A stretch of DNA of 64,000 nucleotides, taken from positions 62,001 through 126,000 of IMG/VR virus record IMGVR_UViG_3300010885_076238. One strand, written 5' to 3'. The position numbers and the translations under genes were made by a program. The notes beneath the pieces are model-generated. The model was not told where the DNA came from. It did no database searches and worked only from the letters and a program-made list of their open reading frames with translations. Shown here in pieces: positions 23,317 through 57,921 of the stretch. Numbering within the stretch: position 1 is the first letter of the stretch; the number at the start of each line of letters is the position of its first letter.

Positions 23317-24438
23317 ATGTCTAAACCAAAAGAAATAGTAAAAAGTGCGATGGATGGTAAGCTTCTTACAAAAGAAGAAAAGTCCATAGTTGCATCTAAT
23401 GCTCAATGCTCAAAAATCTATGCAGAAAAGGTTTTGCAAGAAAGATTTATTGAGGGCGAAGAAGTAATTAAAACTAGTGCTTCTCAAACCTACCTTTATG
23501 CAAAAGACGTTATAAAAGGAAGGTGGAAAGAAGGGGAAGACACTCTATCTAAAGATGCCCATTACGCAGTAAAATATGCTGCAAATGTTTTATTTGGAAG
23601 ATTTCCAAAAGGCGAAAATGAAATTGCAAAAAATCCTAAGGCGGCATATCAATACGCAGTGGCAAGGAGTGCGAGATTTGAAAAAGCAGAACAAAAAATG
23701 ATAGAAGAACTTCCGGCCATGGATTTGGTTGAATATAGCTTAAGTATTATCGGAGATAGATGGCCGGAAGCAGAAGAAAAGATATTAAAATCTTCGCGTC
23801 GTTCTGAGTCTTCCGTCGCCTTCGCTGAGACAATCGTCTATAGTCCATCTACTTCTTCCTATAGCTCTCCGGCGTGTCATTATGCTTGTGGGCATGAATT
23901 CAAATGGAAAGAAGCTGAGTCCGAAATCTTAAAGAATCCTGTGGAGTCTTCTCAATATGCAATTAACGCCTTAAAAGGAAGGTGGGAAGAAGGAGAAGAA
24001 ATTATTTCTACTTGTGGGTCTTCCTCTCTTACTTATGCTTTGTATTTAGAACAAGAGTTTGAAAAAGGAGAGGACGCAATAATCAATTTGATTGCAGAAG
24101 AAAACTCTTGGAGTTCTAATCACCTTATAAATAATTATGTTGGTCGAGTTTTACATGGGAAAAGATGGCTGAAGTTTGAAAGCTTTATCGATAAAGCAAA
24201 TATTGATGATGAAAAATTAACTACGCTAATACAATACTATAGCGATAATGTTAACGCAAAGCTGCCCGACTTCATTCACAATAGAATGATTGCCGCCGCT
24301 ATAAGCAACCCAGAAGATTGGGGCATTCGCAAATATTTCGATTCATTGGAAGAAAGAGAAGATAACGAAAAATTGCTTTTGGTCAAAAGATTTAGTTTAG
24401 ATCAACTTAGGGAAATATTGAGTTCAGTAAATGATTGA
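23317..24438 (+). CDS. 26-aa helical-repeat protein, LP-HN-M family
   Basis: Multiple YAxxVIKGRWxEGE units; AKLPDFIHNRMIAAA; promoter at 23272-23296. Confidence 0.85.
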   Translation: MSKPKEIVKSAMDGKLLTKEEKSIVASNAQCSKIYAEKVLQERFIEGEEVIKTSASQTYLYAKDVIKGRWKEGEDTLSKDAHYAVKYAANVLFGRFPKGENEIAKNPKAAYQYAVARSARFEKAEQKMIEELPAMDLVEYSLSIIGDRWPEAEEKILKSSRRSESSVAFAETIVYSPSTSSYSSPACHYACGHEFKWKEAESEILKNPVESSQYAINALKGRWEEGEEIISTCGSSSLTYALYLEQEFEKGEDAIINLIAEENSWSSNHLINNYVGRVLHGKRWLKFESFIDKANIDDEKLTTLIQYYSDNVNAKLPDFIHNRMIAAAISNPEDWGIRKYFDSLEEREDNEKLLLVKRFSLDQLREILSSVND

Positions 24439-24907
24439 AAACATTACAAAAGAGTGGAAAACCGAGACTGGCTTGGTTGCAAGGGTCATTCAACACCCTC
24501 TTTTATATCATTTTTGTGGTTATGTAGGACTTGATAAGGGTTCTGGTTTTTATGAACTGGACTATGCCAAAATAGAAAACCGCATATATGTTCATGGAGG
24601 CGTAACATTCACAGGAACCTTTAAAGACTCTGCTTTATGGTGGATTGGTTATGACTGTGCGCACTCTTGCGACTTTAGTAAGTATAATCCAAGTGGCGTA
24701 AAAAGAGACTTGAATTTTTGTGTGGATGAGTGCGAATATTTAGCGAAACAAATTTTTCAAACTCCTATTGACTACTATTTTTTAGCTAAGAGAATAGGAA
24801 GACTACCGGAAGACCTTCACAATAAAATGATTGCTTGGGCAATTGAGAATCCTAATGATGAAATAATTAAGGAGTATTTTGAAAATTATGGAATGCCACT
24901 TCTTTGA
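24431..24907 (+). CDS. phage protein (CGYV/VHGG/WWIGYDCAH domain) with appended LP-HN-M motif
   Basis: N-domain unrelated to the repeats; C-terminal GRLPEDLHNKMIAWA. Confidence 0.75.
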   Translation: MIENITKEWKTETGLVARVIQHPLLYHFCGYVGLDKGSGFYELDYAKIENRIYVHGGVTFTGTFKDSALWWIGYDCAHSCDFSKYNPSGVKRDLNFCVDECEYLAKQIFQTPIDYYFLAKRIGRLPEDLHNKMIAWAIENPNDEIIKEYFENYGMPLL

Positions 24908-25139
24908 ATGCCATTGTCACAGCCCAGAACACACTTTGGTTTTTCATCTTTTTGATGATGATCCAAAAATGCTTTACGCCCATGTGTTTTTGAATCCAGA
25001 TACTTTTTTTAAGAGAATTTGGAATTCAATTAAATATATTTTTGGATATAAATGTGTGTATGGTCATTTCGATGAATTTATTTTCAATCCAAAAGATGCT
25101 CAAAAATTAATAAATTTATTAGAACAAATAAAGGAATGA
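24888..25139 (+). CDS. hypothetical protein
   Basis: CHCHSPEH metal-binding-like N-terminus. Confidence 0.65.
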   Translation: MECHFFECHCHSPEHTLVFHLFDDDPKMLYAHVFLNPDTFFKRIWNSIKYIFGYKCVYGHFDEFIFNPKDAQKLINLLEQIKE

Positions 25140-25145
25140 CTTAAA

Positions 25146-25493
25146 ATGATCACCGAATTTAGACTGCCCTATCACGGAACCTATGTCCGTGAGATCAAAT
25201 ACTCTGTTCAGGTCATGTGCTTGCCAGAAAACAGCAACGACCTTATCGTCGCTCTCCTACGCCGCTGCTACCCTGAGATCACCGAAGAAGCGATCAACGA
25301 ACTCGCCTACAAGAACAAGGCGTTCACAATCTTCGGAACGATCAAGATTTTCAACGGCGGGCCAATGTACGCAGTTCTCTACCGTCACGATGAGAAGTGG
25401 TTCATCTACTACGTTCCACAATCCATTCGCAACTCAAAAAGCTTCACGGATCACGACATTCCGAAGAATATTCCTTGCTTCATGGGTTTCTGA
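25146..25493 (+). CDS. hypothetical protein, GC-rich relative to flanks
   Basis: C/G-ending codons dominate, unlike neighbours. Confidence 0.7.
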   Translation: MITEFRLPYHGTYVREIKYSVQVMCLPENSNDLIVALLRRCYPEITEEAINELAYKNKAFTIFGTIKIFNGGPMYAVLYRHDEKWFIYYVPQSIRNSKSFTDHDIPKNIPCFMGF

Positions 25494-25545
25494 GGAAGTC
25501 AACAAATTACTTAAAATAATAATAAATTAGAGTCGTTATCTGATT

Positions 25546-26511
25546 ATGAACATGAACTCAAAAATAATTTCGATAATCAATCACGCTCAGTATTCTGATC
25601 GGGATGCTTGGGAAAAAGCTATAAGCGGAAACAAAGATTTTTTTGAACGAGAATTTATAGCAAAAAGTGCTCACATTTCTTTTGATTATGCCAAATCACT
25701 TGGAGAAAGATTTTCTCTTGGTGAAAAAGTGATTAGCGAAAGTGCAGAAAAAAGCTATAGATATGCCAAAGAAGTTTTGCTATCTAGGTTTGAATTAGGC
25801 GAGGAAAAAGTTCAAAAAGATATTGAATATTGTTACAGATATGCAAAAGATGTTATAAAAAATAGGTGGGAGCCAGCAGAAAAAAATCTCTTGAACTTAA
25901 AGTCATCGGAAGCAAATGAATTTTTAGTTTCCTATGCAATTAATATAATCAAAAGCCAATGGCCCGAGGCAGAGGAAAGAATCAAAAGTATTGAGCCTTA
26001 CCGAATTCACGATTATTGTGTAAATGCTCGAAAAAGCAGATGGGAAGAAGTAGAGCCTCAAATTTTGAACATGAGTGCAACTTCAATTATTGATTATTGT
26101 AAAAACTGCGTAAAAGGACGATGGGAAAAGGCCGAGGAAAAAATTCTAAAGTCTAAACCAACACATAATTTTATTGTTGATTATGCAAAGGAAGTTGTGT
26201 GCGGTCGATGGGTTGAGGGAGAAAAAGAAATGTTGACCGATAAAAAGGTCGCCATTAAAATTAAATATTGCGATGAAGTTCTTGAAGGAAGATGGAAAGA
26301 ATTAGAAGATATTTTATTTGAAAAAGAAAGTACCCAAAGATTATATCAATACGCAAAAGATGTAATAAAAGGGAAGCTGCCTGAGATTCTTCATAATAAA
26401 ATGCTTATGATAGCAATGCTCAAAAAAGACGATTGGACGAACAAGTATTTGAAAGCCAAAAAATACAAGATTGAAAAGAAACTAAAACTTTACGAGACCA
26501 ACAATGCCTAA
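25546..26511 (+). CDS. 26-aa helical-repeat protein, LP-HN-M family
   Basis: About 10 units; KGKLPEILHNKML; leaderless promoter at 25515-25539. Confidence 0.85.
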   Translation: MNMNSKIISIINHAQYSDRDAWEKAISGNKDFFEREFIAKSAHISFDYAKSLGERFSLGEKVISESAEKSYRYAKEVLLSRFELGEEKVQKDIEYCYRYAKDVIKNRWEPAEKNLLNLKSSEANEFLVSYAINIIKSQWPEAEERIKSIEPYRIHDYCVNARKSRWEEVEPQILNMSATSIIDYCKNCVKGRWEKAEEKILKSKPTHNFIVDYAKEVVCGRWVEGEKEMLTDKKVAIKIKYCDEVLEGRWKELEDILFEKESTQRLYQYAKDVIKGKLPEILHNKMLMIAMLKKDDWTNKYLKAKKYKIEKKLKLYETNNA

Positions 26512-28328: not shown

Positions 28329-28372
28329 AAATAAAAATTTATTCAAGCCGTTATGTGTATAAGGAGACAAAA

Positions 28373-29497
28373 ATGAACGAACAATTTGCCAATGTCATTC
28401 GCCAAAGAATTTACCAGCGTGTTCCTCTTGAGCAACTCGCAGAAGCAGGAATTAAGGAATTTTATGTTGCTGGCAATTCTTTGAATAAACAGCCCCCTAA
28501 CGATATTGATATTTTCCCAGTGGGAAATCTCTTTACTCAAGAGCAAGCTGAAAAGCTTGGAAATATCGTTAGTTCAACTAAAAACGCAATCACTGTTAAG
28601 GTTGGTCTTGATAAAAAAATCAACCATCAAACCGTAGATGGTCAGAATGAAATTGAAGTTAGTGGCAAAAACATTGTGGTTCAACTTTGTAATTACCAAC
28701 ACGGTGAACTTGAGTCTTTAGTTAATTCTTTTGATTTTTCTCATATCCAAATTGGAGCCAAGGTAGACAATCTTGGCATCACAGTCTATTACACTAAGGA
28801 ATATGAGAATGCAAAAATGTGTCAATCTACCGAATATGTCGGTAGCGAATACCCTTTGTCTTCTATGATTAGAATGTTCAAATACGCAAAGCGTGGCGAC
28901 TTTGCTGGAAATTCTCATATTTTTTCTGCTTTCAAAATCGTCACAGATGTTGTAGACAGAGGGTTTGATGACTTCGATGACTTCAAGAATCAATTGGATG
29001 CTATTGATCTTGGATTGGTTCCAGAAAATCAAAAGGAACTTGTTGATGCAGGCTTGGCATCAGAAGAATCCGGCTTGGATTTTTCTGAAGAAGGCAAAAA
29101 AGTTCTTAATAAACTGATGAGCTTTTTGATTTTGAGCAAGAAGGCGATTTGCAAAGACGCACAGGCTGCGTATGATTACGCACAAAGCTCTGGCGAACGA
29201 TTTGAAAAGGGCGAAGATGCGATTAGCAAAGATGAAAAATTGGCTCTTGCATATGCAAAAAATATATTGAAAGGTAGGTTTGAAAAAGGCGAAGAAGCCA
29301 TTTCTAACAATCCTTATTTGGTTCATGATTATTGGTGCAATGTGATTAACAAATCAATTCATGTATATGATGTATATAATAATAGCGATATGCAAAAACT
29401 GCCTGAATTTTTGCATAATAAAATGATCGCTTATGGGATGGATAATAATCATTATGCAAAAGACTATCTTTTTAGAATTTCAAAAATCGCAGCGTAA
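28373..29497 (+). CDS. Pol-beta-superfamily nucleotidyltransferase fused to helical repeats and LP-HN-M motif
   Basis: VAGNS...NDIDIF, SFDF, SMIRMFKYAKRG; C-terminal AYDYA...RFEKGE units and KLPEFLHNKMIA; promoter at 28330-28354. Confidence 0.7.
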   Translation: MNEQFANVIRQRIYQRVPLEQLAEAGIKEFYVAGNSLNKQPPNDIDIFPVGNLFTQEQAEKLGNIVSSTKNAITVKVGLDKKINHQTVDGQNEIEVSGKNIVVQLCNYQHGELESLVNSFDFSHIQIGAKVDNLGITVYYTKEYENAKMCQSTEYVGSEYPLSSMIRMFKYAKRGDFAGNSHIFSAFKIVTDVVDRGFDDFDDFKNQLDAIDLGLVPENQKELVDAGLASEESGLDFSEEGKKVLNKLMSFLILSKKAICKDAQAAYDYAQSSGERFEKGEDAISKDEKLALAYAKNILKGRFEKGEEAISNNPYLVHDYWCNVINKSIHVYDVYNNSDMQKLPEFLHNKMIAYGMDNNHYAKDYLFRISKIAA

Positions 29498-33338: not shown

Positions 33339-33701
33339 ATGTGGCTTTTTACTAAATATGGGTTTTTCAGTGTTGTTTGTGCAAGAAAGAACAATGGTTT
33401 GAGTTCTGACGTAGATACAGAAACTCTTATGATCAGAGCTAGATCAAAAAATCATCTTGAAAATTTGATCAATAGTTTTCAAGATTTGAATGATTGTCAA
33501 ATAGCAACAACACACGACACAGATTACCGATACAGAATCTTTGTTCCAAAGAAGATATGGAGCAATGTGATGCTAGAATTATCAAGTGAAATTGATTATG
33601 GAAACTTCAAGAGCAAAGTTCACAAATCTTTGCAAGACCAAGAATTTTCTCATTGCTTGGGTGATATTTGGAGTGTAATGTATAGGTATCAAGATGAGTA
33701 A
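33339..33701 (+). CDS. hypothetical phage protein
   Basis: MWLFTKYGFFSVV...IRAR...DYRYR...IDYGNFK. Confidence 0.75.
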   Translation: MWLFTKYGFFSVVCARKNNGLSSDVDTETLMIRARSKNHLENLINSFQDLNDCQIATTHDTDYRYRIFVPKKIWSNVMLELSSEIDYGNFKSKVHKSLQDQEFSHCLGDIWSVMYRYQDE

Positions 33702-37067: not shown

Positions 37068-37138
37068 ATTTAATATATATATTGTAGTAGATAAAAAGTG
37101 CAAAAAACAATGATTTAATAAATAACTAGGCACTCATA

Positions 37139-40690: not shown

Positions 40691-40953
40691 ACACCATTCA
40701 AGAATTCGTTGATTTTATTGATCAACTTGAAAATTCTAATGTTCGACTTGAGTCTGCTGACTTTCAAAGTGAATTGTTTCACACAATAAATTTAAAAGTT
40801 TTGACCAAAGATATTAAAGATTTTGAATCTTTTCAAACATGGTGGAAAAGTAAAAACTTAACAGATCATCTTCACAAAAAATTAGTTAACACATTATTAA
40901 AAATAAACCCACCAGATAATGTAAAGAACGAACTTTTAGCTATGATGATCTAA
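40687..40953 (+). CDS. 88-aa ORF with apparent CTG start (not in track)
   Basis: Open frame LNTIQEF...PPDNVKNELLAMMI*; GAGGA upstream; CTGA overlap with upstream stop. Confidence 0.55.
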   Translation: MNTIQEFVDFIDQLENSNVRLESADFQSELFHTINLKVLTKDIKDFESFQTWWKSKNLTDHLHKKLVNTLLKINPPDNVKNELLAMMI

Positions 40954-41421: not shown

Positions 41422-42345
41422 ATGGAACCAAAAGAAGCACATAAGGCCGCAAGGTCTGGCGAAATGCGTTGGACAGACGCAATAGAAATTTTCAAGAAAG
41501 ATCCCCAAACTGCTTTCGATTATGCGTCAGAAAATCGATCTAGATTTCTAGAAGCAGAAGAATACATCAAAACCAATGCTGAATTAGCTTGTGCATATGC
41601 ACAACGATTTATCAATGGAAGGTTTCCAGAAGCAGAAGAATACATTAAAAAAGATGCTCAACAGGCTTATAATTATGCCAGATATGTGATTAAAGGTAGA
41701 TTCCCAGAAGCAGAAGAACATATCAAAATCAACCCTGCGGTCGCTTGCAATTATGCAGATAGTGTGCTTGACGAAAGATTCTTAGAAGCAGAAGAATTTA
41801 TCAAACAAGACCCAAGAATTGCATTTGAGTACGCAAGAAGAGTAATTAGGGGAAGATGGATTGAAGCAGAAGATCATATTAAAATAGATGCTCAATCTGC
41901 TTACTTATATGCAAGAGATATTCTAGATCGAAGATGGGAAGAAGCAGAAGAATATATTAAAAAGCAGCCTGACTATGCCTGTGCATATGCAAGAAATGTA
42001 ATCAGAGGCAGATGGGAAGAAGCAGAGCCTTTTATCAAGAACGAAGTATTTGAAGCATTTGGTTATGCAAAAGATATTATCAGAGGTAGATTCTTAGAAG
42101 CAGAGAGCTTGATTAAAAAGAATTTGAGCATTGCTTTTGATTATGTTGAAGAAGTAGTAAAAGGAAGATGGATTGAAGCAGAAGATACCATTCTTAATGG
42201 CAAAAAGAAATCTCTAGAATATTGTTTGCGATATAACGCAAAATTGCCAGAAGCAATTCATAACAAAGTGTTAACAGAAGTTGCTTTTGATAGTAAAGTG
42301 CCAAACCTTGATCTTAAAAAGAAATATGTGAACAGGATCAAGTGA
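41422..42345 (+). CDS. 26-aa helical-repeat protein, LP-HN-M family
   Basis: About 9 regular units AxxYAxxVIxGR[W/F]xEAExxIK; AKLPEAIHNKV; leaderless promoter at 41391-41415. Confidence 0.88.
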   Translation: MEPKEAHKAARSGEMRWTDAIEIFKKDPQTAFDYASENRSRFLEAEEYIKTNAELACAYAQRFINGRFPEAEEYIKKDAQQAYNYARYVIKGRFPEAEEHIKINPAVACNYADSVLDERFLEAEEFIKQDPRIAFEYARRVIRGRWIEAEDHIKIDAQSAYLYARDILDRRWEEAEEYIKKQPDYACAYARNVIRGRWEEAEPFIKNEVFEAFGYAKDIIRGRFLEAESLIKKNLSIAFDYVEEVVKGRWIEAEDTILNGKKKSLEYCLRYNAKLPEAIHNKVLTEVAFDSKVPNLDLKKKYVNRIK

Positions 42346-42830: not shown

Positions 42831-42869
42831 TAATTTTGTTTGCGAGTTATACCAATAAGGAGACATGAA

Positions 42870-43415
42870 ATGAGCGAAAACGGAAGCCAAAAATACTTTG
42901 ATTTTCTTCACAAGTTAGAAAACGACGCTTCTTTTTGTTATAGTTATCTCGGAAATTGCCAAAGGGGTAGCGAAACATGGAACCAATGCTTGCAGACTAT
43001 TGCTAAAGACGCAAGCATTTCCTATACTTGGGCTGCCGCACTAAAATCAAGATTTGAACTTGGTGAACTTGCTATTTCAAAAGTGCCTCAATACTCTATT
43101 CCATATGCAAAAGATATTATAAAGGGCAGGTTCGTATTGGCAGAGCCAAAAATTTTAGAATCTTCTGCCGACTCTTTTAGGTACGCATCGACCGTAATAC
43201 ATGGAAGATGGTTAGAAGCAGAGCCAATAATTGCAAAAGATCCAAATCATTCTTTTCTTTATGCAAGAGATATAATCAAAGGAAGATTTGAACTTGGAGA
43301 AGAAACCATTGCTCACGATGAAGATGCTGCTTTTAGATACGCAACCGATATAATCAAGGGCAAGTTGCCAGAAAAAATGCACAATATTATGATTGCAAAA
43401 GGAGTGGCGGCATGA
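42870..43415 (+). CDS. 26-aa helical-repeat protein, LP-HN-M family
   Basis: Units plus KGKLPEKMHNIMIA; ATG 42870 with AAGGAG; variant promoter at 42826-42850. Confidence 0.85.
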   Translation: MSENGSQKYFDFLHKLENDASFCYSYLGNCQRGSETWNQCLQTIAKDASISYTWAAALKSRFELGELAISKVPQYSIPYAKDIIKGRFVLAEPKILESSADSFRYASTVIHGRWLEAEPIIAKDPNHSFLYARDIIKGRFELGEETIAHDEDAAFRYATDIIKGKLPEKMHNIMIAKGVAA

Positions 43416-47337: not shown

Positions 47338-47535
47338 ATGAACACGATTGACCAGCATCTTTCCGCTCTGATTCTAAAGCAAAGAGGCGATAATAGAAAA
47401 TTGGTTGACGAAGTTCTAAGTCTGTCGGCAGATAGTAAAAATAAAATTTTTCATATTCTTCTTGACTTAGACAACGAAAATAAAAGATTAAAAAATGATG
47501 CTCGTAGAGCAAAGTTTTATCCAAGTTTCAGATGA
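47338..47535 (+). CDS. hypothetical protein
   Basis: Short coupled ORF. Confidence 0.55.
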   Translation: MNTIDQHLSALILKQRGDNRKLVDEVLSLSADSKNKIFHILLDLDNENKRLKNDARRAKFYPSFR

Positions 47536-48074
47536 TAAAAAATCATGGCTACCAATCCATCATGGCTACCAATCCTATAGATTTCAAAAAAGCAACGCTT
47601 AATTATGGCAAGGAAGCCATAGAAGGTGTTCTAGTAATTGCGAATGATCCAGCAATAACTAAACTAGATAAAAAGTCAAGCGTTAAGATTCCTAAAAAAA
47701 TATTCGTGCCTGTAAAGGAGTCTGTTTTTTACACGAATAGTCCTGCTCATATGAATGAAGTTCTTGAAAGATGCAAACAAAGCGATATGTTAGAATTGCT
47801 TAGTTATTTAGACTTATCCGTACCTTTTATAGATGATTATTTCTTTGACGGCGACTCAGGATTTATAGTTAATTTTTATCAGCCAGATCAAGGAGATTGT
47901 CTGGCAGATCAGCGTTATCATAAATGTCCAGTTTGTATTCAATTGCTTGACCCAATCGAATGGCTAAACAATTGGGATATGAGCGACGATGATAAAAATA
48001 AATGGATCGTCGCCATGATAAACCAAAACCTACCAGAAAATATTAAAAATAAACTGCTTTTGATAGGCCTTTAA
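47532..48074 (+). CDS. hypothetical protein with terminal LP-xN motif
   Basis: C-terminus NLPENIKNKLLL. Confidence 0.65.
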   Translation: MIKNHGYQSIMATNPIDFKKATLNYGKEAIEGVLVIANDPAITKLDKKSSVKIPKKIFVPVKESVFYTNSPAHMNEVLERCKQSDMLELLSYLDLSVPFIDDYFFDGDSGFIVNFYQPDQGDCLADQRYHKCPVCIQLLDPIEWLNNWDMSDDDKNKWIVAMINQNLPENIKNKLLLIGL

Positions 48075-48120
48075 TATTAATTATTAAAACGCGTTATCAA
48101 GTATCAAGCAAGGACAACAA

Positions 48121-49137
48121 ATGAATAGCTACCACAAGCAATATAGAGAATTTGTCAAAGAACTCAACCCAACCGATGCAGAAGTTAATAATTTTTTGTG
48201 GGGACATAAAGCAGATTTCTCTCAACATAAGAAATTAGGAATAATTAAAAAAATTCTCACCAGTCCAAAATGGTGTTACGAATACGCAAAACTTATAAAT
48301 AAAGATAGATGGGAAAAGGGCGAAAAAACCATACTGACTGATGCCCAACATTCACACCTTTACGCAAGAGATATAATCAAAGGTAGATGGATCGAAGCAG
48401 AAGAAATTATCAAAACAGAATCCTCAATTGCGTATGATTATGCAGCAAACATAATCAAAGGCAGATGGATCGAAGCAGAAGAAATTATCAAAGAGGATTC
48501 ATATAGAACATATTTTTACGCAGCAAACATAATCAAAGGCAGATGGATCGAAGGCGAAGAAATTATCAAAACAGCCGGTGACGCTGACGCTGCTTATCAT
48601 TATGCAAAAGATATAATTAAAGGTAGATGGATAGAAGCAGAAGATTTTATTAAAACAAATCCAGGTTGTGCTTTTGGTTACGCAAATGATGTTATCAAAG
48701 GTAGATGGATCGAAGCAGAAGATTTTATTAAAACAAATCCATGCTATGCTTATGAGTATGCAAAAGATGTGATCAAAGGCAGATGGATCGAAGCAGAAGA
48801 TTTTATTAAAACAGATCCATACTATGCTTATTATTACGCAAGAGATGTCATCAAAGGTAGATGGATCGAAGGCGAAGAAATTATTAAAACAGATCCACGC
48901 CATGCTTATGATTATGCAAAAGATGTGATCGAAGGCAGATGGATCGAAGGTGAAGATATTATTAAAACAGATCTGCGTTATTCATGGGATTATGTTCGAA
49001 ATTTAGTAAAAGAAAGATGGGAAAATGGAGAAGGAATCTTCGCATCTGATCCACAATATTTGTATAGATATGCCACGGAAATTCTAATAGACGAACTACC
49101 CCCCGAATTAGAAGCAGCATACGCTTTACATGAATAA
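48121..49137 (+). CDS. 26-aa helical-repeat protein with near-identical units
   Basis: [I/V]I[K/E]GRWIE[A/G]E x8 plus degenerate flanks; promoter at 48073-48097. Confidence 0.9.
   Translation: MNSYHKQYREFVKELNPTDAEVNNFLWGHKADFSQHKKLGIIKKILTSPKWCYEYAKLINKDRWEKGEKTILTDAQHSHLYARDIIKGRWIEAEEIIKTESSIAYDYAANIIKGRWIEAEEIIKEDSYRTYFYAANIIKGRWIEGEEIIKTAGDADAAYHYAKDIIKGRWIEAEDFIKTNPGCAFGYANDVIKGRWIEAEDFIKTNPCYAYEYAKDVIKGRWIEAEDFIKTDPYYAYYYARDVIKGRWIEGEEIIKTDPRHAYDYAKDVIEGRWIEGEDIIKTDLRYSWDYVRNLVKERWENGEGIFASDPQYLYRYATEILIDELPPELEAAYALHE
48373..49002 (+). repeat. 78-bp coding tandem repeat, 8 copies (one of 84 bp)
   Basis: Near-constant core ATCAAAGGYAGATGGATCGAAG...ATYAAAAC with variable codons between copies. 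Confidence 0.9.
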
Positions 49138-49146: not shown

Positions 49147-49671
49147 ATGAAAATTATTAAGAAGATAGAAAAAAAATCAGAATACAGTGACAGGTTAGTA
49201 GCCACTACAATTTTATTTAAAAATGAACACGGAATTTTTCAACTAGACGATAGTAAAAATATTTTGCACAAGTGGAATGATAACGAAGGTTGGGTTTACG
49301 TTACCAACGAAACGACAGGCATTAATGACGCAAAAAATTTAATAGAAGAAATGTTTACGCCAGAAACGATCCTGCCTAAAGAAATTGAAGAGCCTCAAAA
49401 ATTTCTTATAAGTAACGATTCGATTTTATCCGACGAAGAAGTGATGATAGTAGTAAACATTGTGAAAAAAGCAGTGAATGAATGGAGACTGTTTCCCGGC
49501 ATGAACGAAGAAAAAAAAGAATGTTTACAAGAATTGGAGTATCTTAGATATTGTAATGATAACGAACTCACAGCCTTCTTTAAACACTCTGGCAAAATCT
49601 TTCTTAGTAGTCTGCCAGAAATGATTAAAAATAAACTAATCTGCAAAATGGCTTTCAAAGAAGCTGCCTAG
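49147..49671 (+). CDS. hypothetical protein with terminal LP-xN motif
   Basis: SLPEMIKNKLIC near the C-terminus. Confidence 0.7.
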   Translation: MKIIKKIEKKSEYSDRLVATTILFKNEHGIFQLDDSKNILHKWNDNEGWVYVTNETTGINDAKNLIEEMFTPETILPKEIEEPQKFLISNDSILSDEEVMIVVNIVKKAVNEWRLFPGMNEEKKECLQELEYLRYCNDNELTAFFKHSGKIFLSSLPEMIKNKLICKMAFKEAA

Positions 49672-49692: not shown

Positions 49693-50049
49693 ATGGAAAA
49701 TAAAGTTTTTGCGTTAATTTCTAAAGAGGAAGGCTACGAACTACTTCTTGAATTTTATAGTATCTGGTTTGCTGCAAGAAACATCAAAGATATTCTGAGT
49801 GAAGATAGACATCTTGACCTTCCTTCTTTTAGAAACTGCTCAGAGGACATTTGCTTGTTGTCACGAACATTGGGGCAAAAAGAAGTGTTTGATTTTATTA
49901 AAGAAAAACTAGATTGTGAAGAAATAGTTCTAGAAGATGAAAGAAATAAAATTCTAGTTAATTCACAAGAAGATGACGACGAAGAAGATGACGAAGATGA
50001 TGATGACGACGAATATGACGATGATGACGACGAAGAAGAAGATGAATAA
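49693..50049 (+). CDS. protein with long poly-D/E tail
   Basis: Ends EDDDEEDDEDDDDDEYDDDDDEEEDE. Confidence 0.75.
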   Translation: MENKVFALISKEEGYELLLEFYSIWFAARNIKDILSEDRHLDLPSFRNCSEDICLLSRTLGQKEVFDFIKEKLDCEEIVLEDERNKILVNSQEDDDEEDDEDDDDDEYDDDDDEEEDE

Positions 50050-51737: not shown

Positions 51738-52691
51738 ATGAACGCTAAAGAATCATACTTTCACGCAAAAAATGTTCTCAAAGGAAGAAGCAAAGACTTT
51801 GAAGATCATATATTAAAAACCAAATGGAATTGTTGGTCAGAAGATCATAAGTATTACAACCTTTATTTTAAAAATATACTCAAAGGCAGATGGGAAGAAT
51901 TAGAAAATCGCCTTGTAAAAGACATTGTGGCTCCAAAAAAAGGAGATATGCTTTCGCACAACGAGTGGAACATAGCAATAAATTATTGTGAAAATATTAA
52001 TGAAAGATGCAATGAATTAGAAGAAAAAATATTATCTCTTGTTAAAAATTGGCGCTTTGATGATATGGCAATAAACTATTGTGAAAAAGTCATCAAAGGA
52101 AGATGGGAAGAATTAGAAGAAATTATTAAAAAAGAGCCAAATTCCCTTTCTCGCGCACACACTTGCTACTTGTACGCAGAAAGAATCATAAAAGGCAGAT
52201 GGAAGGAAGCAGAAGAACTTATTAAAGAAGAACCAAGAGTCGCTGTTGATTATGCTAGAGAAATAATCAAAGGCAGATGGAATGAAGCAGAGCCATACAT
52301 TCTAAAAAATGAATTATGGGCATTCAATTATGCAAGAGACATAATCAAAGATAGATGGATCGAAGCAGAAAATATTATTACAGGCTCCGCACAAAAATAT
52401 TACAAACAACTTGTTAAAAATAAAATTCTCGACCTGTTACAAAAAAAAGATTATGACAATGTTTTGAAATACGTTGATTATAAGCACTTCACTAATATCA
52501 TTAAAAATGCAGAGAAAAAGCACCACATTCCAGATGCTATCCGAAATGCGATGATGGCATCCTGCATCACAGGAAACGACCAAAACAGCACCAGCTTTTT
52601 CAAACAAGAAAAAATCTTCAAGGAAAAAATGAAAAATTTCTTGAAAGATTATAAAGGATTACTTGTTGATGATGTAATCGACAAGCTATAA
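51738..52691 (+). CDS. helical-repeat protein, LP-HN-M family
   Basis: IKGRWxE[L/A]E units; IPDAIRNAMMA; terminal VDDVIDKL. Confidence 0.85.
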   Translation: MNAKESYFHAKNVLKGRSKDFEDHILKTKWNCWSEDHKYYNLYFKNILKGRWEELENRLVKDIVAPKKGDMLSHNEWNIAINYCENINERCNELEEKILSLVKNWRFDDMAINYCEKVIKGRWEELEEIIKKEPNSLSRAHTCYLYAERIIKGRWKEAEELIKEEPRVAVDYAREIIKGRWNEAEPYILKNELWAFNYARDIIKDRWIEAENIITGSAQKYYKQLVKNKILDLLQKKDYDNVLKYVDYKHFTNIIKNAEKKHHIPDAIRNAMMASCITGNDQNSTSFFKQEKIFKEKMKNFLKDYKGLLVDDVIDKL

Positions 52692-52733: not shown

Positions 52734-53552
52734 ATGACCCCACAAGAAGCATATTCTGAATTAATTAATCTTTTCAATAGCTCCCGACGAGGAATCGTCT
52801 TTTACTTTAAAGATTTTATTAATGCACCCGAACACAAAAAAGAAGTAGATGAACTAAAAAAAATAATTATTCAAGACCCCTTCACCGCTTCAGATTTTGC
52901 AATAAGTTCCGGCGAAAGATGGATCGAAGCAGAAGAAATTATTAAAACAAATCCAAAAATATTAAGCCATTATTTTTGTATGTTGTTTACAAGGGAATTC
53001 AAAAGAAGATGGAATGAAGCAGAAGCAGATATTCTAAAAGGAACTCCTAATAGTGTTTGGGATTATTATAAACCTGTGCAGTATCATGTGTCAAACTCTT
53101 TCCCAGACAATGTTTGGATAGAAGCAGAACCAGTTTTTGAAAAGAAAATGAGCATCTTTCATCAATATGTTCTAACCACAAAAAAGCCCAACAAAACCTA
53201 TGAACAAAAAATATTAAATGATCCAAGTTCTAAATATAATCCCAAATACATCTATGACTACTCTTCCAAAGTTCTACAAAGCAGATGGAAAGAAGCAGAA
53301 CATATAATATTAAAAAATCCAGACTACGCAGCAAAATATTGCTCGAAATTTAAGATGGTAGTTCCAGAAGAAATTCATAACCAAATAGTTGCAGAAGTCG
53401 CCTTAACCGACAAATCTTCCTCTTTCAGAAAGAAATTTCTCCAAGATCAAACCAAAAGAAAAGAAAAATTTTTAGAATATCTCAAAGAACTTGTTAGTAG
53501 TAATGTTATTAACAAAGATAGCACAGTTGAAGAATTAATAAATAATATTTAA
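52734..53552 (+). CDS. helical-repeat protein, LP-HN-M family
   Basis: RWIEAE units; VPEEIHNQIVA; terminal TVEELINNI. Confidence 0.85.
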   Translation: MTPQEAYSELINLFNSSRRGIVFYFKDFINAPEHKKEVDELKKIIIQDPFTASDFAISSGERWIEAEEIIKTNPKILSHYFCMLFTREFKRRWNEAEADILKGTPNSVWDYYKPVQYHVSNSFPDNVWIEAEPVFEKKMSIFHQYVLTTKKPNKTYEQKILNDPSSKYNPKYIYDYSSKVLQSRWKEAEHIILKNPDYAAKYCSKFKMVVPEEIHNQIVAEVALTDKSSSFRKKFLQDQTKRKEKFLEYLKELVSSNVINKDSTVEELINNI

Positions 53553-53571
53553 TCCCAACCGTTATAACACT

Positions 53572-54441
53572 ATGACAACTCTAAAAATCCCCAAGTTCAG
53601 AAATGCCAAAAGAGCAGCAGAGTTTGCTGTTAAACACAAAGTTACACTAAACGAAGAAACAGAAAAATTAATAGCACAAGACGCTGTAGCGTCCTACAAC
53701 TACGCATATCACGTTAAAGGCAAATTTGAACTTGCTGAACCCTTAATCGCTAAAGATTTGCATTTAGCAGTAATCTACGCCATCTATATTCTAAAAGGTA
53801 GATTCTATCTGGCCGAAAAAATGATTGCAGAATCTATCACAGAATATGGCTTGAAAAAAGAAAATTTCTATAACGCACCAGCATTTAATTACGCAAGAAG
53901 TGTTTGCCAAGGAAGATTTGAACTATTAGAACCATTAATTATTAATGATCCTGATCTTTGCTATCATTACGCCGCAGATGTTATTGGAGGAAGATGGGAG
54001 GAAGGAGAACCAACAATAGCAAAAGATTTACAACTTTCTCTGAATTATGCAAGATATGTATTAGACGGAAGATTTGAACTAGCAGAACCCTTGCTTGCAC
54101 AAGACTCAGACTACGCTTTTGAATACGCATCAGATGTTATTAACAGATATATAACTAACTGCGACTACAGAGACAGAACAAATAAACTTGCAAAAAGATT
54201 TGAACTTGGTGAAGAAGCTATTTCTAAAAATATTAAGAAATTAGCAAAATATATCGATCTAACCAAACAAGAACTAACAGGCACTATTCACAACATGATG
54301 ATCGCAAGAAGCCTAACCGATGACCTTCTTTCAAAAACATACTTCGATTACATCAGCGATAATAAAAAAACACTACTAGAGTATTTGAGCAAATATCCCG
54401 AAAATATGACCGTAAAAGAAATAACCCAATCTCTTAGTTAA
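53572..54441 (+). CDS. helical-repeat protein, LP-HN-M family
   Basis: PKFRNAKRA N-motif; GRFELAE units; LTGTIHNMMIA; leaderless promoter at 53541-53565. Confidence 0.85.
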   Translation: MTTLKIPKFRNAKRAAEFAVKHKVTLNEETEKLIAQDAVASYNYAYHVKGKFELAEPLIAKDLHLAVIYAIYILKGRFYLAEKMIAESITEYGLKKENFYNAPAFNYARSVCQGRFELLEPLIINDPDLCYHYAADVIGGRWEEGEPTIAKDLQLSLNYARYVLDGRFELAEPLLAQDSDYAFEYASDVINRYITNCDYRDRTNKLAKRFELGEEAISKNIKKLAKYIDLTKQELTGTIHNMMIARSLTDDLLSKTYFDYISDNKKTLLEYLSKYPENMTVKEITQSLS

Positions 54442-54469
54442 TAATAATTATTCCAAACCGTTATGAGGT

Positions 54470-55174
54470 ATGGAAGAACTAAACGAAATTATCATCTGCT
54501 CAATCCTCAACAAACTGAAAATTGATGCTATCGCCACTGTTTCAGAACAACTCAGTTGGGCAGATGCAGATGAAGATGGAAAAGTAGACGGCGGTGTGCA
54601 TTATTTTTTGGAACTTGACGCACTAAAAGAAACAAGAGAAAGATTAGTAAAAGAAATTCTTGAAGGATTCAATCGTCCAGAAATTCGAAATTATAGATTC
54701 AACAATAGCATCAAATACTCAAAAGTGCATCAGTTACAAGAAAACGAAAAACACATAAAGGAAATAAAATTTTTCGGAATCAACAGCAAAAATAAAACAA
54801 TAGAACCAATAAGTGAAAAATTAGATAAAAATATTAAAGATCTACTGCCAGAAAAAGTATACAATTTTATTATTGCAAAATGTTTGGTAGATGAAAATCA
54901 TAAACATATACTCAGTCTAAATGGATTAGATTTAATTCTCAATTATTGGAAAAATAATCTCCCCGATACAGATAATGATTGTTGGTCGGGTGACGGAAAT
55001 TCACAATATTTTTGGGAAGTGTTGTTCAAAGAAAACAACCAAATAAACGTAGATTATGGAGGCGAATTTGGAGCAGGCGAACTAAATTTCTATAGCCACA
55101 GTCAAGATTTATTAAAATATGATTTTTGGAAGGTTTTTACCGAAAATTATCCAAAAATTACTAATAATTCATAA
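54470..55174 (+). CDS. hypothetical protein (paralogue of 57301-57921)
   Basis: MEELNEIII vs MQEFNEIII; LPEKVYNFIIA; promoter at 54440-54464. Confidence 0.75.
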   Translation: MEELNEIIICSILNKLKIDAIATVSEQLSWADADEDGKVDGGVHYFLELDALKETRERLVKEILEGFNRPEIRNYRFNNSIKYSKVHQLQENEKHIKEIKFFGINSKNKTIEPISEKLDKNIKDLLPEKVYNFIIAKCLVDENHKHILSLNGLDLILNYWKNNLPDTDNDCWSGDGNSQYFWEVLFKENNQINVDYGGEFGAGELNFYSHSQDLLKYDFWKVFTENYPKITNNS

Positions 55175-55182
55175 ATAAAATT

Positions 55183-56329: not shown

Positions 56330-56521
56330 TCATTTCTTATCGCTGCTGATTAGATTTAAATAACCGCCGCAATTCCTACATTTGGCTTTACCAGCATTTA
56401 TATCATACATTTTGGCCTTTTCTTTGTTTCCGCATCTACTGCACTCAGCATTACGATGGCCTTGAGGAGCATTTTTAGTTTTCGCTTCTAATATTTGTTG
56501 AAACTCATAAAAATTAATCAT
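56330..56521 (-). CDS. small zinc-ribbon protein with capsid-targeting-like N-terminus
   Basis: MINFYEFQQILEA; CSRC...CRNC; TAAATA (minus, 56540-56545) and AAGGAG. Confidence 0.7.
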   Translation of the reverse strand: MINFYEFQQILEAKTKNAPQGHRNAECSRCGNKEKAKMYDINAGKAKCRNCGGYLNLISSDKK

Positions 56522-56573
56522 AATATCTCCTTTTATTTTTATTTAGATTTGTGCAAATAAAAATCAACTTGAA

Positions 56574-56606
56574 AATATTAATAATTCCAAACCGTTATAC
56601 AGTATG
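56574..56606 (+). repeat. 33-bp promoter/start repeat identical to 57271-57303
   Basis: AATATTAATAATTCCAAACCGTTATACAGTATG at both sites; the last 23 nt also at 57927-57949. Confidence 0.9.
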
Positions 56607-57272
56607 AGATACGAAAAAGTAGAACCAAGAGAAATTAAATACTACTACAGCAACTATATTGAGAACGAAAATGTAACAAACTTCTTCGCACAAAAATACG
56701 CGGGAGATAAAACCACCACAGAAGAACTAAACCTACTACAAATTCTTATCTCAAATGTTACAAAAAATATACTTGAAAAAACAAAATCAACCCAAGATTG
56801 TATAGTATTTGACCCTACCACAGAAGATTTTTTTGTAACCGATCTAGATTCTTTCCAAAATCAACGCAGTTTTTTCTACCGAAGCGACTTTACTGATTTT
56901 TCAACTAAATGGAACGAAAATTGTTTACCAAGTTTACATAATGCAAAATTAATAAAAAATCGAAAAGTAGATACGCTGCTTTTTGATAATGTTCGACAAC
57001 ACCTAGATGAAAAAGTATTTAATGCTCTATTGGCTACCGCCGCTTTTTGCCAAGATGAACTCAAAAATTACACAAATGTTTCTTGCGGCTTCTTATTCAA
57101 ATTCTTATCCACTCAGCACTACAACGCACATAAAGAAAAATATTATGAGCAAATAAGTCAAGAATATTACATTTGCAAACAGTACGAAGGACAAGTTGTT
57201 ATAGCAAACAAAAAAACAGTAAATTTAATGCCTATCGAATGGAATGATGTAAATATTGATTATAACCCTTAA
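56604..57272 (+). CDS. hypothetical protein
   Basis: Leaderless; degenerate LDEKVFNALLA motif. Confidence 0.7.
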   Translation: MRYEKVEPREIKYYYSNYIENENVTNFFAQKYAGDKTTTEELNLLQILISNVTKNILEKTKSTQDCIVFDPTTEDFFVTDLDSFQNQRSFFYRSDFTDFSTKWNENCLPSLHNAKLIKNRKVDTLLFDNVRQHLDEKVFNALLATAAFCQDELKNYTNVSCGFLFKFLSTQHYNAHKEKYYEQISQEYYICKQYEGQVVIANKKTVNLMPIEWNDVNIDYNP

Positions 57273-57300
57273 TATTAATAATTCCAAACCGTTATACAGT

Positions 57301-57921
57301 ATGCAAGAATTCAACGAAATTATTATTAAGTCAATATTTAAGAAATTAAATATTGATTGCCTCATTCTAAGCCAAAAAGATTTCGTCGCTCACGATAAAG
57401 AAGATTGCTGGGTAAATCACAAACTAAGAAAGAAAATCTTCGCCCTAAAAAATGACAAAGTGTCCCTCGTAGAACTCAGCCTAAAAGACTCATTGCCCGA
57501 AAAAGTCTACAACTATATCTTGGCAGAATCCTTGGCTAAAGATTCTAAAGAATTATTAAAAAGCCCAAGAGAAATCCTTATGGATATGTGGAAAAACTTT
57601 CGTCCAGACCTAGATGATGAATTATTTGATGATGATTGCGGCAACGACGAAAGAAACGAAAGAAACGGAGCAATGGAATTTATAAGTTATTGGATCTTCT
57701 TGTATCTAGAAAATAATGAAGTAAAAATTAAATACTCTGTGCGTGACGTTAAACGCTCAGGATGGAACAACGAAGAAGTAAAAATTCCAGATATAATATC
57801 AATAAGAACATCAGAAGATGACCTCAAATACCAAGAAAAAACCAACCTTATAATCTCAGAAGATGACCTCAAAAACCCTATGTGGGAAAAAATCTGCTGC
57901 AAAGATAATTGGATAAAATAA
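57301..57921 (+). CDS. hypothetical protein (paralogue of 54470-55174)
   Basis: Leaderless ATG 57301; LPEKVYNYILA. Confidence 0.75.
   Translation: MQEFNEIIIKSIFKKLNIDCLILSQKDFVAHDKEDCWVNHKLRKKIFALKNDKVSLVELSLKDSLPEKVYNYILAESLAKDSKELLKSPREILMDMWKNFRPDLDDELFDDDCGNDERNERNGAMEFISYWIFLYLENNEVKIKYSVRDVKRSGWNNEEVKIPDIISIRTSEDDLKYQEKTNLIISEDDLKNPMWEKICCKDNWIK

What the first reader, a model, noticed from the sequence alone, without database searches (positions are those of the whole stretch)
24431..57921. The LP-HN-M motif is grafted onto unrelated domains, like a portable docking tag
Seen: the same ~15-aa motif occurs in proteins lacking the solenoid or with a foreign N-domain. Examples are 24431 (GRLPEDLHNKMIAWA after a CGYV/VHGG domain), 28373 (KLPEFLHNKMIAYG after a nucleotidyltransferase), 47532 (NLPENIKNKLL), 49147 (SLPEMIKNKLI), 40687 (PPDNVKNELLA), 54470 and 57301 (LPEKVYN[F/Y]I[I/L]A, internal) and 56604 (degenerate). 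Inference: a short helical tag that recruits different cargo to one common partner or compartment, giving a plug-in effector system.
Basis: partly seen in the sequence, partly recalled or inferred. Interest (0 to 1): 0.75.

Follow-up and report, generated by a model that had tools for sequence, protein, structure and literature searches.

The report
Conserved end-cap of a phage repeat family
The LP-HN-M motif is real, but it is mainly the conserved last unit of a large, unnamed family of helical-repeat proteins in an uncultured jumbo phage, and it sits on a truly unrelated domain in only one or two proteins.

Summary
The motif [KR]-L-P-E-x-h-H-N-x-M-h-A is real. A regex finds 14 copies against 0.02 expected, all in coding frames on the + strand. 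It is the core of a roughly 45-residue, three-helix module: the first helix of a repeat, a lengthened second helix (LPE..HN..M..A), and a third helix (K-Y-F).

The module derives from the family's own 26-residue repeat (G-R-W-P-E-A-E becomes G-K-L-P-E-x-x-H-N). In public metagenomes, 282 cluster representatives carry it. In 141 of the 149 best, it ends within 30 residues of the C-terminus, usually after repeats.

True grafts exist but are rare:
- 24431 joins a phrog_2164 domain, which stands alone in other phages, to the module.
- 28373 joins a nucleotidyltransferase-like domain and 2-3 repeats to the module.
- Both fusions are kept in related phages.

The other cited cases are weaker:
- 54470 and 57301 are marginal.
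- 49147 has a conserved helix resembling only the second helix.
- 47532, 40687 and 56604 are not supported as the same motif.

No known family matches by Pfam, NCBIfam, PDB or Foldseek, including F-box/PRANC. A docking role is possible but untested. The capping-repeat origin is well supported.

The parts
24770..24892 (+). Tag module on a foreign domain. The gene is 24431-24907; residues 1-110 are a phrog_2164 domain and residues 114-154 are the tag (IDYYFLAKRIGRLPEDLHNKMIAWAIENPNDEIIKEYFEN).
   Evidence: The tag scores 69.5 bits with profile A2. The N-domain matches phrog_2164 at E 3e-22. The AF2 model has helices at 112-122, 127-139 and 144-152 with pLDDT 78-90. Orthologs keep the tag (A1). 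Tag-less 135-aa homologs occur in L006 and L009.
29366..29488 (+). Tag module of the gene listed as 28355-29497, whose true start is probably the ATG at 28373. The gene encodes a nucleotidyltransferase-like N-domain, 2-3 repeats, and the tag KLPEFLHNKMIAYGMDNNHYAKDYL.
   Evidence: The tag scores 49.3 bits and 2 repeats are detected at residues 282-320. The N-domain matches phrog_4400 at E 5e-11. Orthologs L001_7051 (68% identity) and L004_7803 (57%) keep the whole architecture.
24226..24357 (+). Tag of solenoid protein 23317-24438, which has 7 repeats. The tag KLPDFIHNRMIAAAISNPEDWGIRKYF is followed by a further C-terminal extension.
   Evidence: 63.6 bits.
26341..26469 (+). Tag of solenoid protein 25546-26511, which has 8 repeats.
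   Evidence: 58.2 bits.
42211..42342 (+). Tag of solenoid protein 41422-42345, which has 10 repeats. This is the protein that was modelled.
   Evidence: 43.3 bits. In the AF2 model, residues 1-230 have pLDDT 97-99. The tag helices at 263-272, 277-289 and 296-306 have pLDDT 53-70.
43332..43400 (+). Short tag of solenoid protein 42840-43415. The sequence GKLPEKMHNIMIAKGVAA runs to the stop codon, so the third helix is absent.
   Evidence: 34.6 bits; sequence.
52506..52619 (+). Tag of solenoid protein 51738-52691 (HIPDAIRNAMMASCIT...FF), followed by a C-terminal extension.
   Evidence: 39.0 bits.
53331..53462 (+). Tag of solenoid protein 52734-53552 (VVPEEIHNQIVAEVAL...KF), followed by a C-terminal extension.
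   Evidence: 43.1 bits.
54283..54363 (+). Diverged tag of solenoid protein 53572-54441 (ELTGTIHNMMIARSLTDDLLSKTYF). The LPE is lost but HN, M and YF are kept.
   Evidence: 20.5 bits. It was not in the seed set and was still found at E 2e-5.
6726..6863 (+). Tag of protein 6303-6938, which has degenerate repeats.
   Evidence: 47.3 bits.
14301..14432 (+). Tag of solenoid protein 13821-14438 (GKLPVKMHSKMIAYALDNPKNEFINKYF).
   Evidence: 65.7 bits.
17818..17955 (+). Tag of protein 17521-18084 (ALPSCLHNRILMHSAV), followed by a C-terminal extension.
   Evidence: 42.0 bits. Orthologs are L013_6384 and L004_6742.
20622..20750 (+). Tag of the short protein 20418-20822, which has one repeat plus the tag. 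It lies just downstream of a calpain-like protease gene.
   Evidence: 69.5 bits. The ortholog is L013_9109.
61141..61263 (+). Tag of protein 60595-61341, which has about 100 aa of unassigned N-terminal sequence, 2 repeats and the tag.
   Evidence: 47.1 bits.
63309..63443 (+). Tag of protein 62895-63608. Its repeats read xRLPxxxE, and the tag is GRLPETLHNYMF.
   Evidence: 54.5 bits. The ortholog is L017_14507.
54833..54898 (+). Internal LPEKVYNFIIAKCLV block in the non-solenoid protein 54470-55174. The match to the tag is marginal.
   Evidence: 9.4 bits. E about 1e-3 to 2e-4 over the window's ORFs. hhalign probability 30%.
57484..57561 (+). Internal LPEKVYNYILAESL block in the paralog 57301-57921. 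The match to the tag is marginal.
   Evidence: 9.3 bits. It is 36% identical to the 54470 protein (A4).
57000..57047 (+). HLDEKVFNALLATAAF in 56604-57272, the third and most diverged paralog of the 54470 group. The tag profile does not detect it.
   Evidence: Alignment A4. No profile hit. Coordinates.
49612..49668 (+). C-terminal SLPEMIKNKLICKMAFKEAA of the non-solenoid protein 49147-49671. It resembles the second helix of the tag only.
   Evidence: The profile match is weak (E 0.01-0.06). The ending is nearly invariant in four orthologs of 58-81% identity (A5).
48018..48071 (+). C-terminal NLPENIKNKLLLIGL of protein 47532-48074. It is not significant as a tag.
   Evidence: E 0.15-3.7. No ortholog was recovered.
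40912..40950 (+). C-terminal PPDNVKNELLAMMI of the small ORF 40687-40953. The tag profile does not detect it.
   Evidence: Translation. The ortholog L004_16299 ends NPPDSVKNVLISMTL.
48121..49137 (+). Solenoid protein with 10 near-perfect 26-aa repeats and no proper tag. It ends ...DELPPELEAAYALHE, a degenerate remnant.
   Evidence: 10 repeats and no tag hit. The 78-nt DNA period is seen.

Best explanation
The LP-HN-M motif is the signature of the C-terminal capping unit of a phage-specific alpha-solenoid family built from 26-residue two-helix repeats (consensus xxAYxYAKDVIKGRWxEAExxIxKDP).

The cap is a diverged last repeat. Its first helix is kept. The G-R-W-P-E-A-E turn becomes G-K-L-P-E-x-h-H-N. 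The short second helix is lengthened to about 13 residues (PExhHNxMhAxAh). A third helix carrying K-x-Y-F closes the stack. The conserved L, P, E, H, N, M, A, Y and F most likely form the small core that seals the open end of the solenoid. That last step is inferred.

Because this three-helix unit of about 45 residues can probably fold with only zero to three repeats in front of it, gene fusion has occasionally joined it to unrelated N-terminal domains. The examples here are the phrog_2164 domain at 24431 and a nucleotidyltransferase-like domain at 28373. Those chimeras have been inherited stably.

The family is hugely expanded: at least 16 genes in this 64-kb piece of a 204-kb uncultured jumbo phage, many behind one shared promoter-like motif. 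It probably acts as a set of protein-binding scaffolds during infection. The variable repeats would give specificity and the constant cap a common structural role, and possibly a common contact. This functional reading is inferred.
For: **The motif is real and paralogous.**
- 14 regex hits against 0.02 expected.
- 15 profile hits of 20-70 bits.

**It is continuous with the repeat.**
- The residues before LPE follow the first-helix consensus of the repeat (Y 72%, A 50%, G 53%, K 69%).
- In the subfamily of 62895, P0224, P0246 and P0263, every repeat reads G-R-L-P-E-x-L-E and only the last reads L-P-E-x-L-H-N/T.

**The structure fits.**
- The solenoid model has pLDDT 97-99, with alternating helices of 12 and 7 residues. 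At the end it has helices of 10, 13 and 11 residues.
- The same three helices appear in the 24431 model.
- By shape, residues 109-154 of 24431 superpose on pieces of TPR/PPR repeat proteins at TM 0.55-0.60.

**The distribution fits.**
- 282 cluster representatives out of 1.84 billion match at E<=1e-3.
- In 141 of the 149 best hits the module ends within 30 aa of the C-terminus, with a median tail of 6 aa.
- 125 of 149 have at least one repeat upstream. Only 3 have more than 100 aa of repeat-free N-terminus.
- Only 20 of 120 solenoid homologs carry this cap. Many of the rest end in a different one, YWxxYxxF.

**The grafts are real and old.**
- Tag-less 135-aa homologs of the 24431 domain occur in L006 and L009, and three further loci match only residues 4-111.
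- Orthologs keep the tag at 60-72% identity, against 58-66% for the N-domain.
- The nearest tag within the window is only 39% identical.
- The 28373 architecture is kept in L001 and L004.
Against: - In 24431 there is no solenoid to cap, yet the module is conserved as strongly as the enzyme-like domain. This points to a role beyond capping.
- H and N are 96% conserved polar residues. That would also fit a binding site.
- The tag region of the 41422 model has only pLDDT 53-70, so its packing on the last repeat is not shown. I had no access to coordinates to check which residues are buried.
- 49147 has an invariant C-terminal helix resembling the second helix, with no repeat in front. This hints that the helix alone may carry a function.
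Confidence: 0.7

Rival explanations
1. Portable docking module. The roughly 45-residue three-helix unit is an independent interaction domain. It ties every family member and the chimeric enzymes to one common partner, which could be a phage machine, a host protein or other family members. The origin of the unit as a capping repeat would be incidental.
For: - The module is kept on a non-solenoid domain in the 24431 orthologs under equal constraint.
- It is also kept on the nucleotidyltransferase-like fusion.
- The polar residues H and N are near-invariant at 96%.
- Some proteins carry two modules (P0186, P0241).
- Minimal proteins with one repeat plus the tag are common.
- Short helix-B-like endings are conserved in orthologs of 49147 and 40687.
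Against: - No partner was identified, and no co-folding could be run.
- Clear foreign-domain grafts are about 2 in 149 of the best global hits.
- Sister subfamilies of the same solenoid do without this module.
- The conserved positions fall on two faces of helix B, as expected for a helix buried between two others. This comes from my helical-wheel reasoning, not from a tool result.
Confidence: 0.25
2. F-box/PRANC-like adaptor. The L-P-x-E-type start and three-helix shape would mark a C-terminal F-box-like domain that recruits a host degradation machine, as in poxvirus ankyrin-PRANC proteins.
For: The architecture is analogous, with variable helical repeats followed by a conserved C-terminal three-helix module of about 45 aa starting with L-P-E. 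This resemblance is recalled from knowledge of poxvirus ANK/PRANC proteins and is only a lead.
Against: - No F-box, F-box-like or PRANC hit appears even at E<=10 when all 26 tag sequences are scanned against Pfam or in the full proteins.
- No named family lies near the tag in the Atlas feature search, where the best score is 0.53.
- The element is a phage. The contig is in IMG/VR, its relatives are Uroviricota-type contigs, and the helicase matches a jumbo phage of an acidobacterium. Bacteria have no SCF ligase.
Confidence: 0.02
3. The weak non-solenoid cases (47532, 49147, 40687, 54470, 57301, 56604) carry an unrelated or convergent short helix that only resembles the tag. The apparent 'grafting onto many domains' would then be mostly an artefact of reading a degenerate pattern.
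For: - Profile E-values are marginal to non-significant.
- hhalign gives a probability of 30% over 21 columns.
- These proteins lack both the first-helix and the K-Y-F parts of the module.
Against: - LPE-x-[IVM]-K-N-[KE]-L occurs twice at C-termini against 0.001 expected.
- The blocks are the best-conserved parts of their families.
Confidence: 0.55

Closest known systems
Capping units of helical-repeat proteins (the C-terminal 'solvating' helix of TPR domains, and the N- and C-caps of ankyrin and designed repeat proteins)
   Same: - It is a diverged terminal repeat with its own sequence signature.
- It always sits at the end of the array and is followed by one extra helix.
- Its shape superposes on TPR/PPR pieces at TM 0.55-0.60.
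   Different: - The repeat is 26 residues long (78-nt period), not 33-35.
- There is no sequence or profile match to TPR, Sel1, HEAT, ANK or PPR above threshold.
- No PDB fold match is better than E 0.09.
- This cap also occurs on a non-repeat domain and is conserved there.
Poxvirus and giant-virus ankyrin-repeat proteins with a C-terminal PRANC/F-box-like domain
   Same: - It is a large viral multigene family.
- A variable repeat array is followed by a constant C-terminal helical module of about 45 aa.
- The module begins with L-P-E.
   Different: - No F-box or PRANC profile match.
- The host is bacterial.
- The module is derived from the repeat itself rather than being a separate domain.
Gad2 (Gabija anti-defence 2) nucleotidyltransferase-fold phage proteins. 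This comparison applies only to the N-domain of 28373.
   Same: - Residues 1-245 have the G-[GS]...D-x-D nucleotidyltransferase signature (AGNSLN...NDIDIF).
- They score 0.97 with 196 shared features against viral Atlas clusters in which 19-67% of members carry PF26128.
- Gad2 is a protein of about 400 aa with a predicted nucleotidyltransferase domain (bioRxiv 10.1101/2023.05.01.538930).
   Different: - No Pfam HMM hit to PF26128.
- No tblastn hit in GenBank phages.
- The C-terminal half here is solenoid repeats plus the tag.

Membership tests
Unnamed phage 26-residue alpha-solenoid family with the LPE-HN cap | Tandem 26-aa two-helix repeats with the consensus YAxxVIxGRWxEAE | tested here: met
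   - The 78-nt DNA period is seen.
- A repeat HMM finds 2-10 units in 11 tag-bearing proteins.
- The AF2 model has pLDDT 97-99.
- 247 homologs were found at E<=1e-3.
- The feature is not met by 24431, 54470, 57301, 49147 or 47532, which have 0 repeats.
Unnamed phage 26-residue alpha-solenoid family with the LPE-HN cap | A C-terminal module of about 45 aa with the form (Y)xxxxxxGKLPExhHNxMhAxAh...KxYF | tested here: met
   - 15 window proteins score 20-70 bits.
- 282 representatives match in public data.
- 141 of 149 are C-terminal.
F-box / PRANC | Match to the Pfam F-box, F-box-like or PRANC profiles | tested here: not met
   No such hit for the 20 full proteins at E<=0.1, nor for the 26 isolated tags at E<=10.
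F-box / PRANC | A host with a Skp1/cullin ubiquitin ligase for the box to bind | not testable with these tools
   The host is unknown. The contig and its relatives look like tailed phages, which argues against a eukaryotic host.
TPR / Sel1 / HEAT / ankyrin repeats | Profile match and a repeat length of 33-45 residues | tested here: not met
   - Only sub-threshold TPR_7 hits appear (20 bits against a cut-off of 27.9).
- NCBIfam gives nothing.
- PDB sequence search gives nothing.
- The period is 26 aa.
Gad2 (PF26128), for the 28373 N-domain | Pfam PF26128 match | tested here: inconclusive
   - No HMM hit at E<=10.
- The Atlas language-model features give 0.97 to clusters that carry PF26128.
- I could not confirm that this Pfam copy contains PF26128.
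phrog_2164, for the 24431 N-domain | PHROG profile match over the domain | tested here: met
   E 3e-22, with residues 10-110 matching profile positions 26-127 of 135. Free-standing 135-aa homologs occur in L006 and L009, with three more loci matching the same residues.

The most novel reading that the evidence does not exclude
The three-helix LPE-HN-YF unit is a true docking domain. It would plug a whole repertoire of variable solenoid binders, plus at least two enzyme-like cargos (one perhaps an anti-defence nucleotidyltransferase of the Gad2 type), into one shared partner during infection. Shortened helix-only versions (LPExIKNKL-COOH, LPEKVYNxIIA) would do the same on further unrelated proteins. 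That would make it a bacterial-virus counterpart of the ankyrin/F-box host-range families of poxviruses.
Probability: 0.2. Interest if true: 0.8.

Novelty: new variant of a known kind. Interest (0 to 1): 0.45.

Why it matters
About a quarter of the genes in this stretch of a 204-kb uncultured phage belong to one helical-repeat family. No name, Pfam model or solved structure was found for it, and no relative among GenBank phage records. Showing that the striking motif is the family's end-cap gives a clean signature for finding the family: 282 clusters in public data. It also separates members that are plain solenoids from the rare chimeras in which the cap carries an enzyme-like domain. Those chimeras are the best handles for working out what the family does. 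One of them may be related to a known anti-defence enzyme. If the cap proves to be a shared contact point, the family would be a modular host-manipulation kit of a kind so far described for viruses of eukaryotes rather than for phages.

Tried and rejected
**Searches that found no known relative.**
- Pfam, PHROGs and NCBIfam scans of all tag proteins gave no named family for the tag or the repeat.
- PDB sequence searches with one protein and with a 48-sequence profile gave nothing.
- Foldseek against PDB gave nothing below E 0.03 for either model.
- tblastn of a solenoid and of the 28373 N-domain against 50,697 GenBank phage records gave no match. Megablast of 20 kb gave none.
- A scan of 185,579 species genomes with the 48121 solenoid found no relative, though sensitivity was limited to six exact peptide patterns.
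- Three full-text literature searches for such a family found nothing relevant. The jumbo-phage comparative paper PMC7824862 does not mention it.

**Searches that failed technically.**
- The search for related loci with alignments A3 and A2 failed because they are too degenerate.
- Searches for orthologs of 54470 and 47532 returned only the source contig itself.

**Ideas rejected.**
- DNA mimicry by the acidic EAE ladder: the solenoids have pI values from 5.2 to 9.2, so they are not uniformly acidic.
- The tag as a DNA-level recombination site: the DNA repeat families are the 78-nt repeat units, not the tags. Tags of paralogs are at most 39% identical at the protein level.
- Chance or low complexity.
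- F-box/PRANC.

Full report
**What the window is.**
The window is low in G+C (about 33%), and nearly all genes lie on the + strand. It is positions 62001-126000 of IMG/VR contig IMGVR_UViG_3300010885_076238, which is 204,311 bp long. The window carries an RNA ligase, two ATP-dependent DNA ligases, a DNA methylase, a helicase and a metallophosphatase. The helicase is 36% identical to that of the 309-kb Tunturiibacter phage Tunturi_5. No GenBank phage matches the DNA. Related metagenomic contigs of 15 to 246 kb share gene order and content. The element is therefore an uncultured jumbo phage whose host is unknown.

**Is the motif there?**
Yes. LP[ED]x[ILMV][HKYR]N occurs 14 times in the six-frame translation. 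Every hit is on the + strand inside a long ORF. Shuffling the residues of the same ORFs gives 0.02 hits on average.

An HMM built from 14 clear copies, and later a profile of 26 copies (A2), finds 15 strong copies in the window.

The conserved stretch is longer than 15 residues. The alignment gives xxxYxxxxxxGKLPExxHNxMxAxAxxxxxDxxxKxYF. P, H and N are each conserved at 96%, the Y of K-Y-F at 92%, and L at 84%.

**What the motif is.**
Most of the proteins that carry it are made of 26-residue repeats with a 78-nt DNA period. The repeat consensus is xxAYxYAKDVIKGRWxEAExxIxKDP.

AlphaFold models 41422 as a regular stack of alternating 12- and 7-residue helices with pLDDT 97-99. At the end the pattern changes to helices of 10, 13 and 11 residues. 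The middle one starts at P-E of the motif, and the last one carries K-Y-V/F. The same three helices close the 24431 protein, at residues 112-122, 127-139 and 144-152, with pLDDT 78-90.

The residues before L-P-E follow the first-helix consensus of the repeat. G-K-L-P-E lines up with G-R-W-P-E.

In one subfamily every repeat already reads G-R-L-P-E-x-L-E, and only the last reads L-P-E-x-L-H-N/T. That subfamily includes window gene 62895 and P0224, P0246 and P0263.

The motif is therefore the diverged last repeat of the array. Its second helix is lengthened, and a third helix is added. By shape, the isolated segment superposes on pieces of TPR and PPR proteins at TM 0.55-0.60.

**How widespread it is.**
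The 45-column profile finds 282 cluster representatives at E<=1e-3 and 30 at E<=1e-10 among 1.84 billion. Among the 149 best:
- The module ends within 30 residues of the C-terminus in 141, with a median tail of 6 residues.
- 88 have two or more repeats upstream, 37 have one, and 24 have none. The last group is mostly short proteins.
- Only three have more than 100 repeat-free N-terminal residues: P0248, P0255 and P0125. By eye, P0255 is a degenerate solenoid.

Among 120 homologs of the 41422 solenoid, only 20 end in this cap. Many of the others carry an N-terminal domain of about 230 residues, and several of these have HTH_35 or Phage_FRD3 Pfam hits. They end in a different short cap, YWxxYxxF. 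The LPE-HN unit thus marks one branch of a larger phage-only repeat family.

The solenoid fold matches only unnamed viral clusters in the ESM Atlas. The family has no relative in Pfam, NCBIfam, PDB sequences or PDB folds.

**The claimed grafts.**

*24431.* Residues 10-110 match phrog_2164 at E 3e-22. Related domains are common in phages as free proteins of about 122-151 residues. In the two loci I read, L006 and L009, the homologous gene encodes 135 residues and stops where the module begins here. Three further viral loci match only residues 4-111.

Seven close relatives were found, and all seven carry the module. Across the five most diverged full-length ones, identity is 60-72% in the module and 58-66% in the domain. 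A more distant ortholog in L001 (53% identity) also keeps it, with L-S-E in place of L-P-E. The nearest tag of a window paralog is only 39% identical, so the fusion is old. This is a real graft.

*28355.* The true start is probably the ATG at 28373, where the orthologs begin. The protein has a nucleotidyltransferase-like N-domain that matches phrog_4400 and carries the G-N-S...D-I-D signature. It then has two to three repeats and the module. Orthologs of 68% and 57% identity keep the whole arrangement. This protein is a foreign domain joined to a short solenoid, not to a bare tag.

*54470, 57301 and 56604.* They are paralogs of 24-36% identity, and the L-[PD]-E-K-V-[YF]-N block is their best-conserved part. 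The link to the tag rests on E about 1e-3 and an hhalign probability of 30% over 21 columns.

*49147.* It ends in S-[LM]-P-E-x-I-K-N-K-L-I-C-K-M-A-F-K-E-A-A. This ending is nearly invariant in orthologs of 58-81% identity but scores only E 0.01-0.06 with the tag profile.

*47532 and 40687.* Neither is significant with the tag profile. The 40687 ending is conserved in one ortholog.

These six cases may be remote or convergent relatives of the second helix.

**How it most likely works.**

*Shown.* The module is repeat-derived, C-terminal and three-helical. It is specific to one branch of the family and is conserved even where no repeat precedes it.

*Inferred.* The conserved L, M, A, Y and F form the small hydrophobic core that seals the open end of the stack. 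P-E starts the long helix. H-N replaces the acidic E-x-E of internal repeats because there is no following repeat to pair with.

On a helical wheel, the conserved positions fall on two faces of helix B. That is what a helix sandwiched between two others would show. This is my own reasoning, and I could not inspect coordinates.

I give this structural-cap reading 0.7. It does not exclude a second role. The equal conservation on the 24431 domain and the invariant polar pair are what keep the docking idea alive, at 0.25.

An F-box-like reading is rejected on profile evidence and on the phage nature of the element.

**What the family is for.**
This remains unknown. At least 16 members lie in 64 kb: 15 tagged proteins plus the untagged 48121. 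Relatives carry 5-7 members in 20-30 kb.

Many members sit directly behind one promoter-like motif, TAATWATT-N6-CGTTAT. It gives 30 hits against 3.9 expected, which suggests a common expression class.

Variable repeat surfaces with a constant end are typical of protein-binding scaffolds. I therefore favour a role as binders of host or phage proteins during infection.

One lead concerns the 28373 N-domain. It scores 0.97 in the Atlas feature search against viral clusters that carry the Gad2 anti-Gabija family. Gad2 is described in bioRxiv 10.1101/2023.05.01.538930. No HMM or BLAST result confirms this link.

**Verdict.**
The finding is best described as the end-cap signature of a new phage-specific solenoid family, with two genuine, stably inherited chimeras.

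It is a new variant of a known kind, namely repeat proteins with capping units that are occasionally fused to other domains. Interest is moderate. It would rise sharply if a shared partner were found.

Noticed in passing
window, about 20 sites on the + strand, e.g. 54445-54464, 56579-56598, 57276-57295, 57922-57941, 48078-48097, 53546-53565, 41396-41415, 25520-25539, 23277-23296, 6262-6281, 62858-62877: A promoter-like motif, TAATWATT-N6-CGTTAT, gives 30 hits with up to 2 mismatches against 3.9 expected. Nearly all hits are on the + strand and lie 5-45 nt upstream of start codons, including those of many solenoid/tag genes. In several cases CGTTAT lies only 6-12 nt before the ATG, so the leaders would be very short or absent.
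   Followed up: partly
window 28373-29107 (N-domain of the 28355-29497 gene): The nucleotidyltransferase-like domain scores 0.97 by language-model features against viral clusters that carry PF26128 (Gad2, Gabija anti-defence 2). There is no Pfam HMM hit and no tblastn hit in GenBank phages. The gene probably starts at the ATG at 28373, as its orthologs do.
   Followed up: partly
window, C-termini of 23317, 6303, 17521, 51738, 52734, 53572, 60595 and 62895 proteins: Eight tag proteins carry a further 30-50-residue extension after the K-Y-F helix. It ends at the very C-terminus in (S/T)(V/I)xE(L/I)(L/I)xx(L/I), for example TVEELINNI, TVKEVLMGLK and NTIKDLLDSI. The extension is conserved in orthologs L001_31-843 and L013_6384-6950. 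It is a second shared C-terminal element of unknown role.
   Followed up: partly
window 10510-13796: There are three adjacent repeat proteins of another kind. Two have INT_rpt (PF14882) units of about 55 aa, with repeats of the form WPSxPxxxYKxEWKGWxDFxG. One has three RPDWF-ending units.
   Followed up: partly
window 30050-32536 (-) and 34149-36446 (-): Two paralogous proteins of 765-828 aa lie on the minus strand and share an N-terminus (MNFKEY...). They have no family hit in Pfam or NCBIfam. Each lies next to a small gene that looks like an alpha/beta hydrolase (33694-34152 on + and 36453-37133 on -).
   Followed up: partly
window 19390-20466: A calpain-family cysteine protease (PF00648, E 1e-17) has an N-terminal segment resembling a secretion or anchor signal (MKLFIETLEARTVLS). 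A PF00648 gene also lies in relative L013, directly after a WGR-type ligase gene.
   Followed up: no
window 48121-49137: This is the most regular solenoid, with 10 near-identical 26-aa repeats. It lacks the LPE-HN cap and ends in ...DELPPELEAAYALHE, which looks like a decayed or truncated cap.
   Followed up: partly
P0186, P0241 (metagenomic homologs): Two homologs carry two tag modules in one protein, arranged as solenoid-tag-solenoid-tag. They look like fusions of two adjacent family genes.
   Followed up: no
window 49693-50049, 43897-44325, 61950-62423: Three small proteins end in long runs of Asp/Glu, which are visible as the DNA repeat family D10.
   Followed up: no
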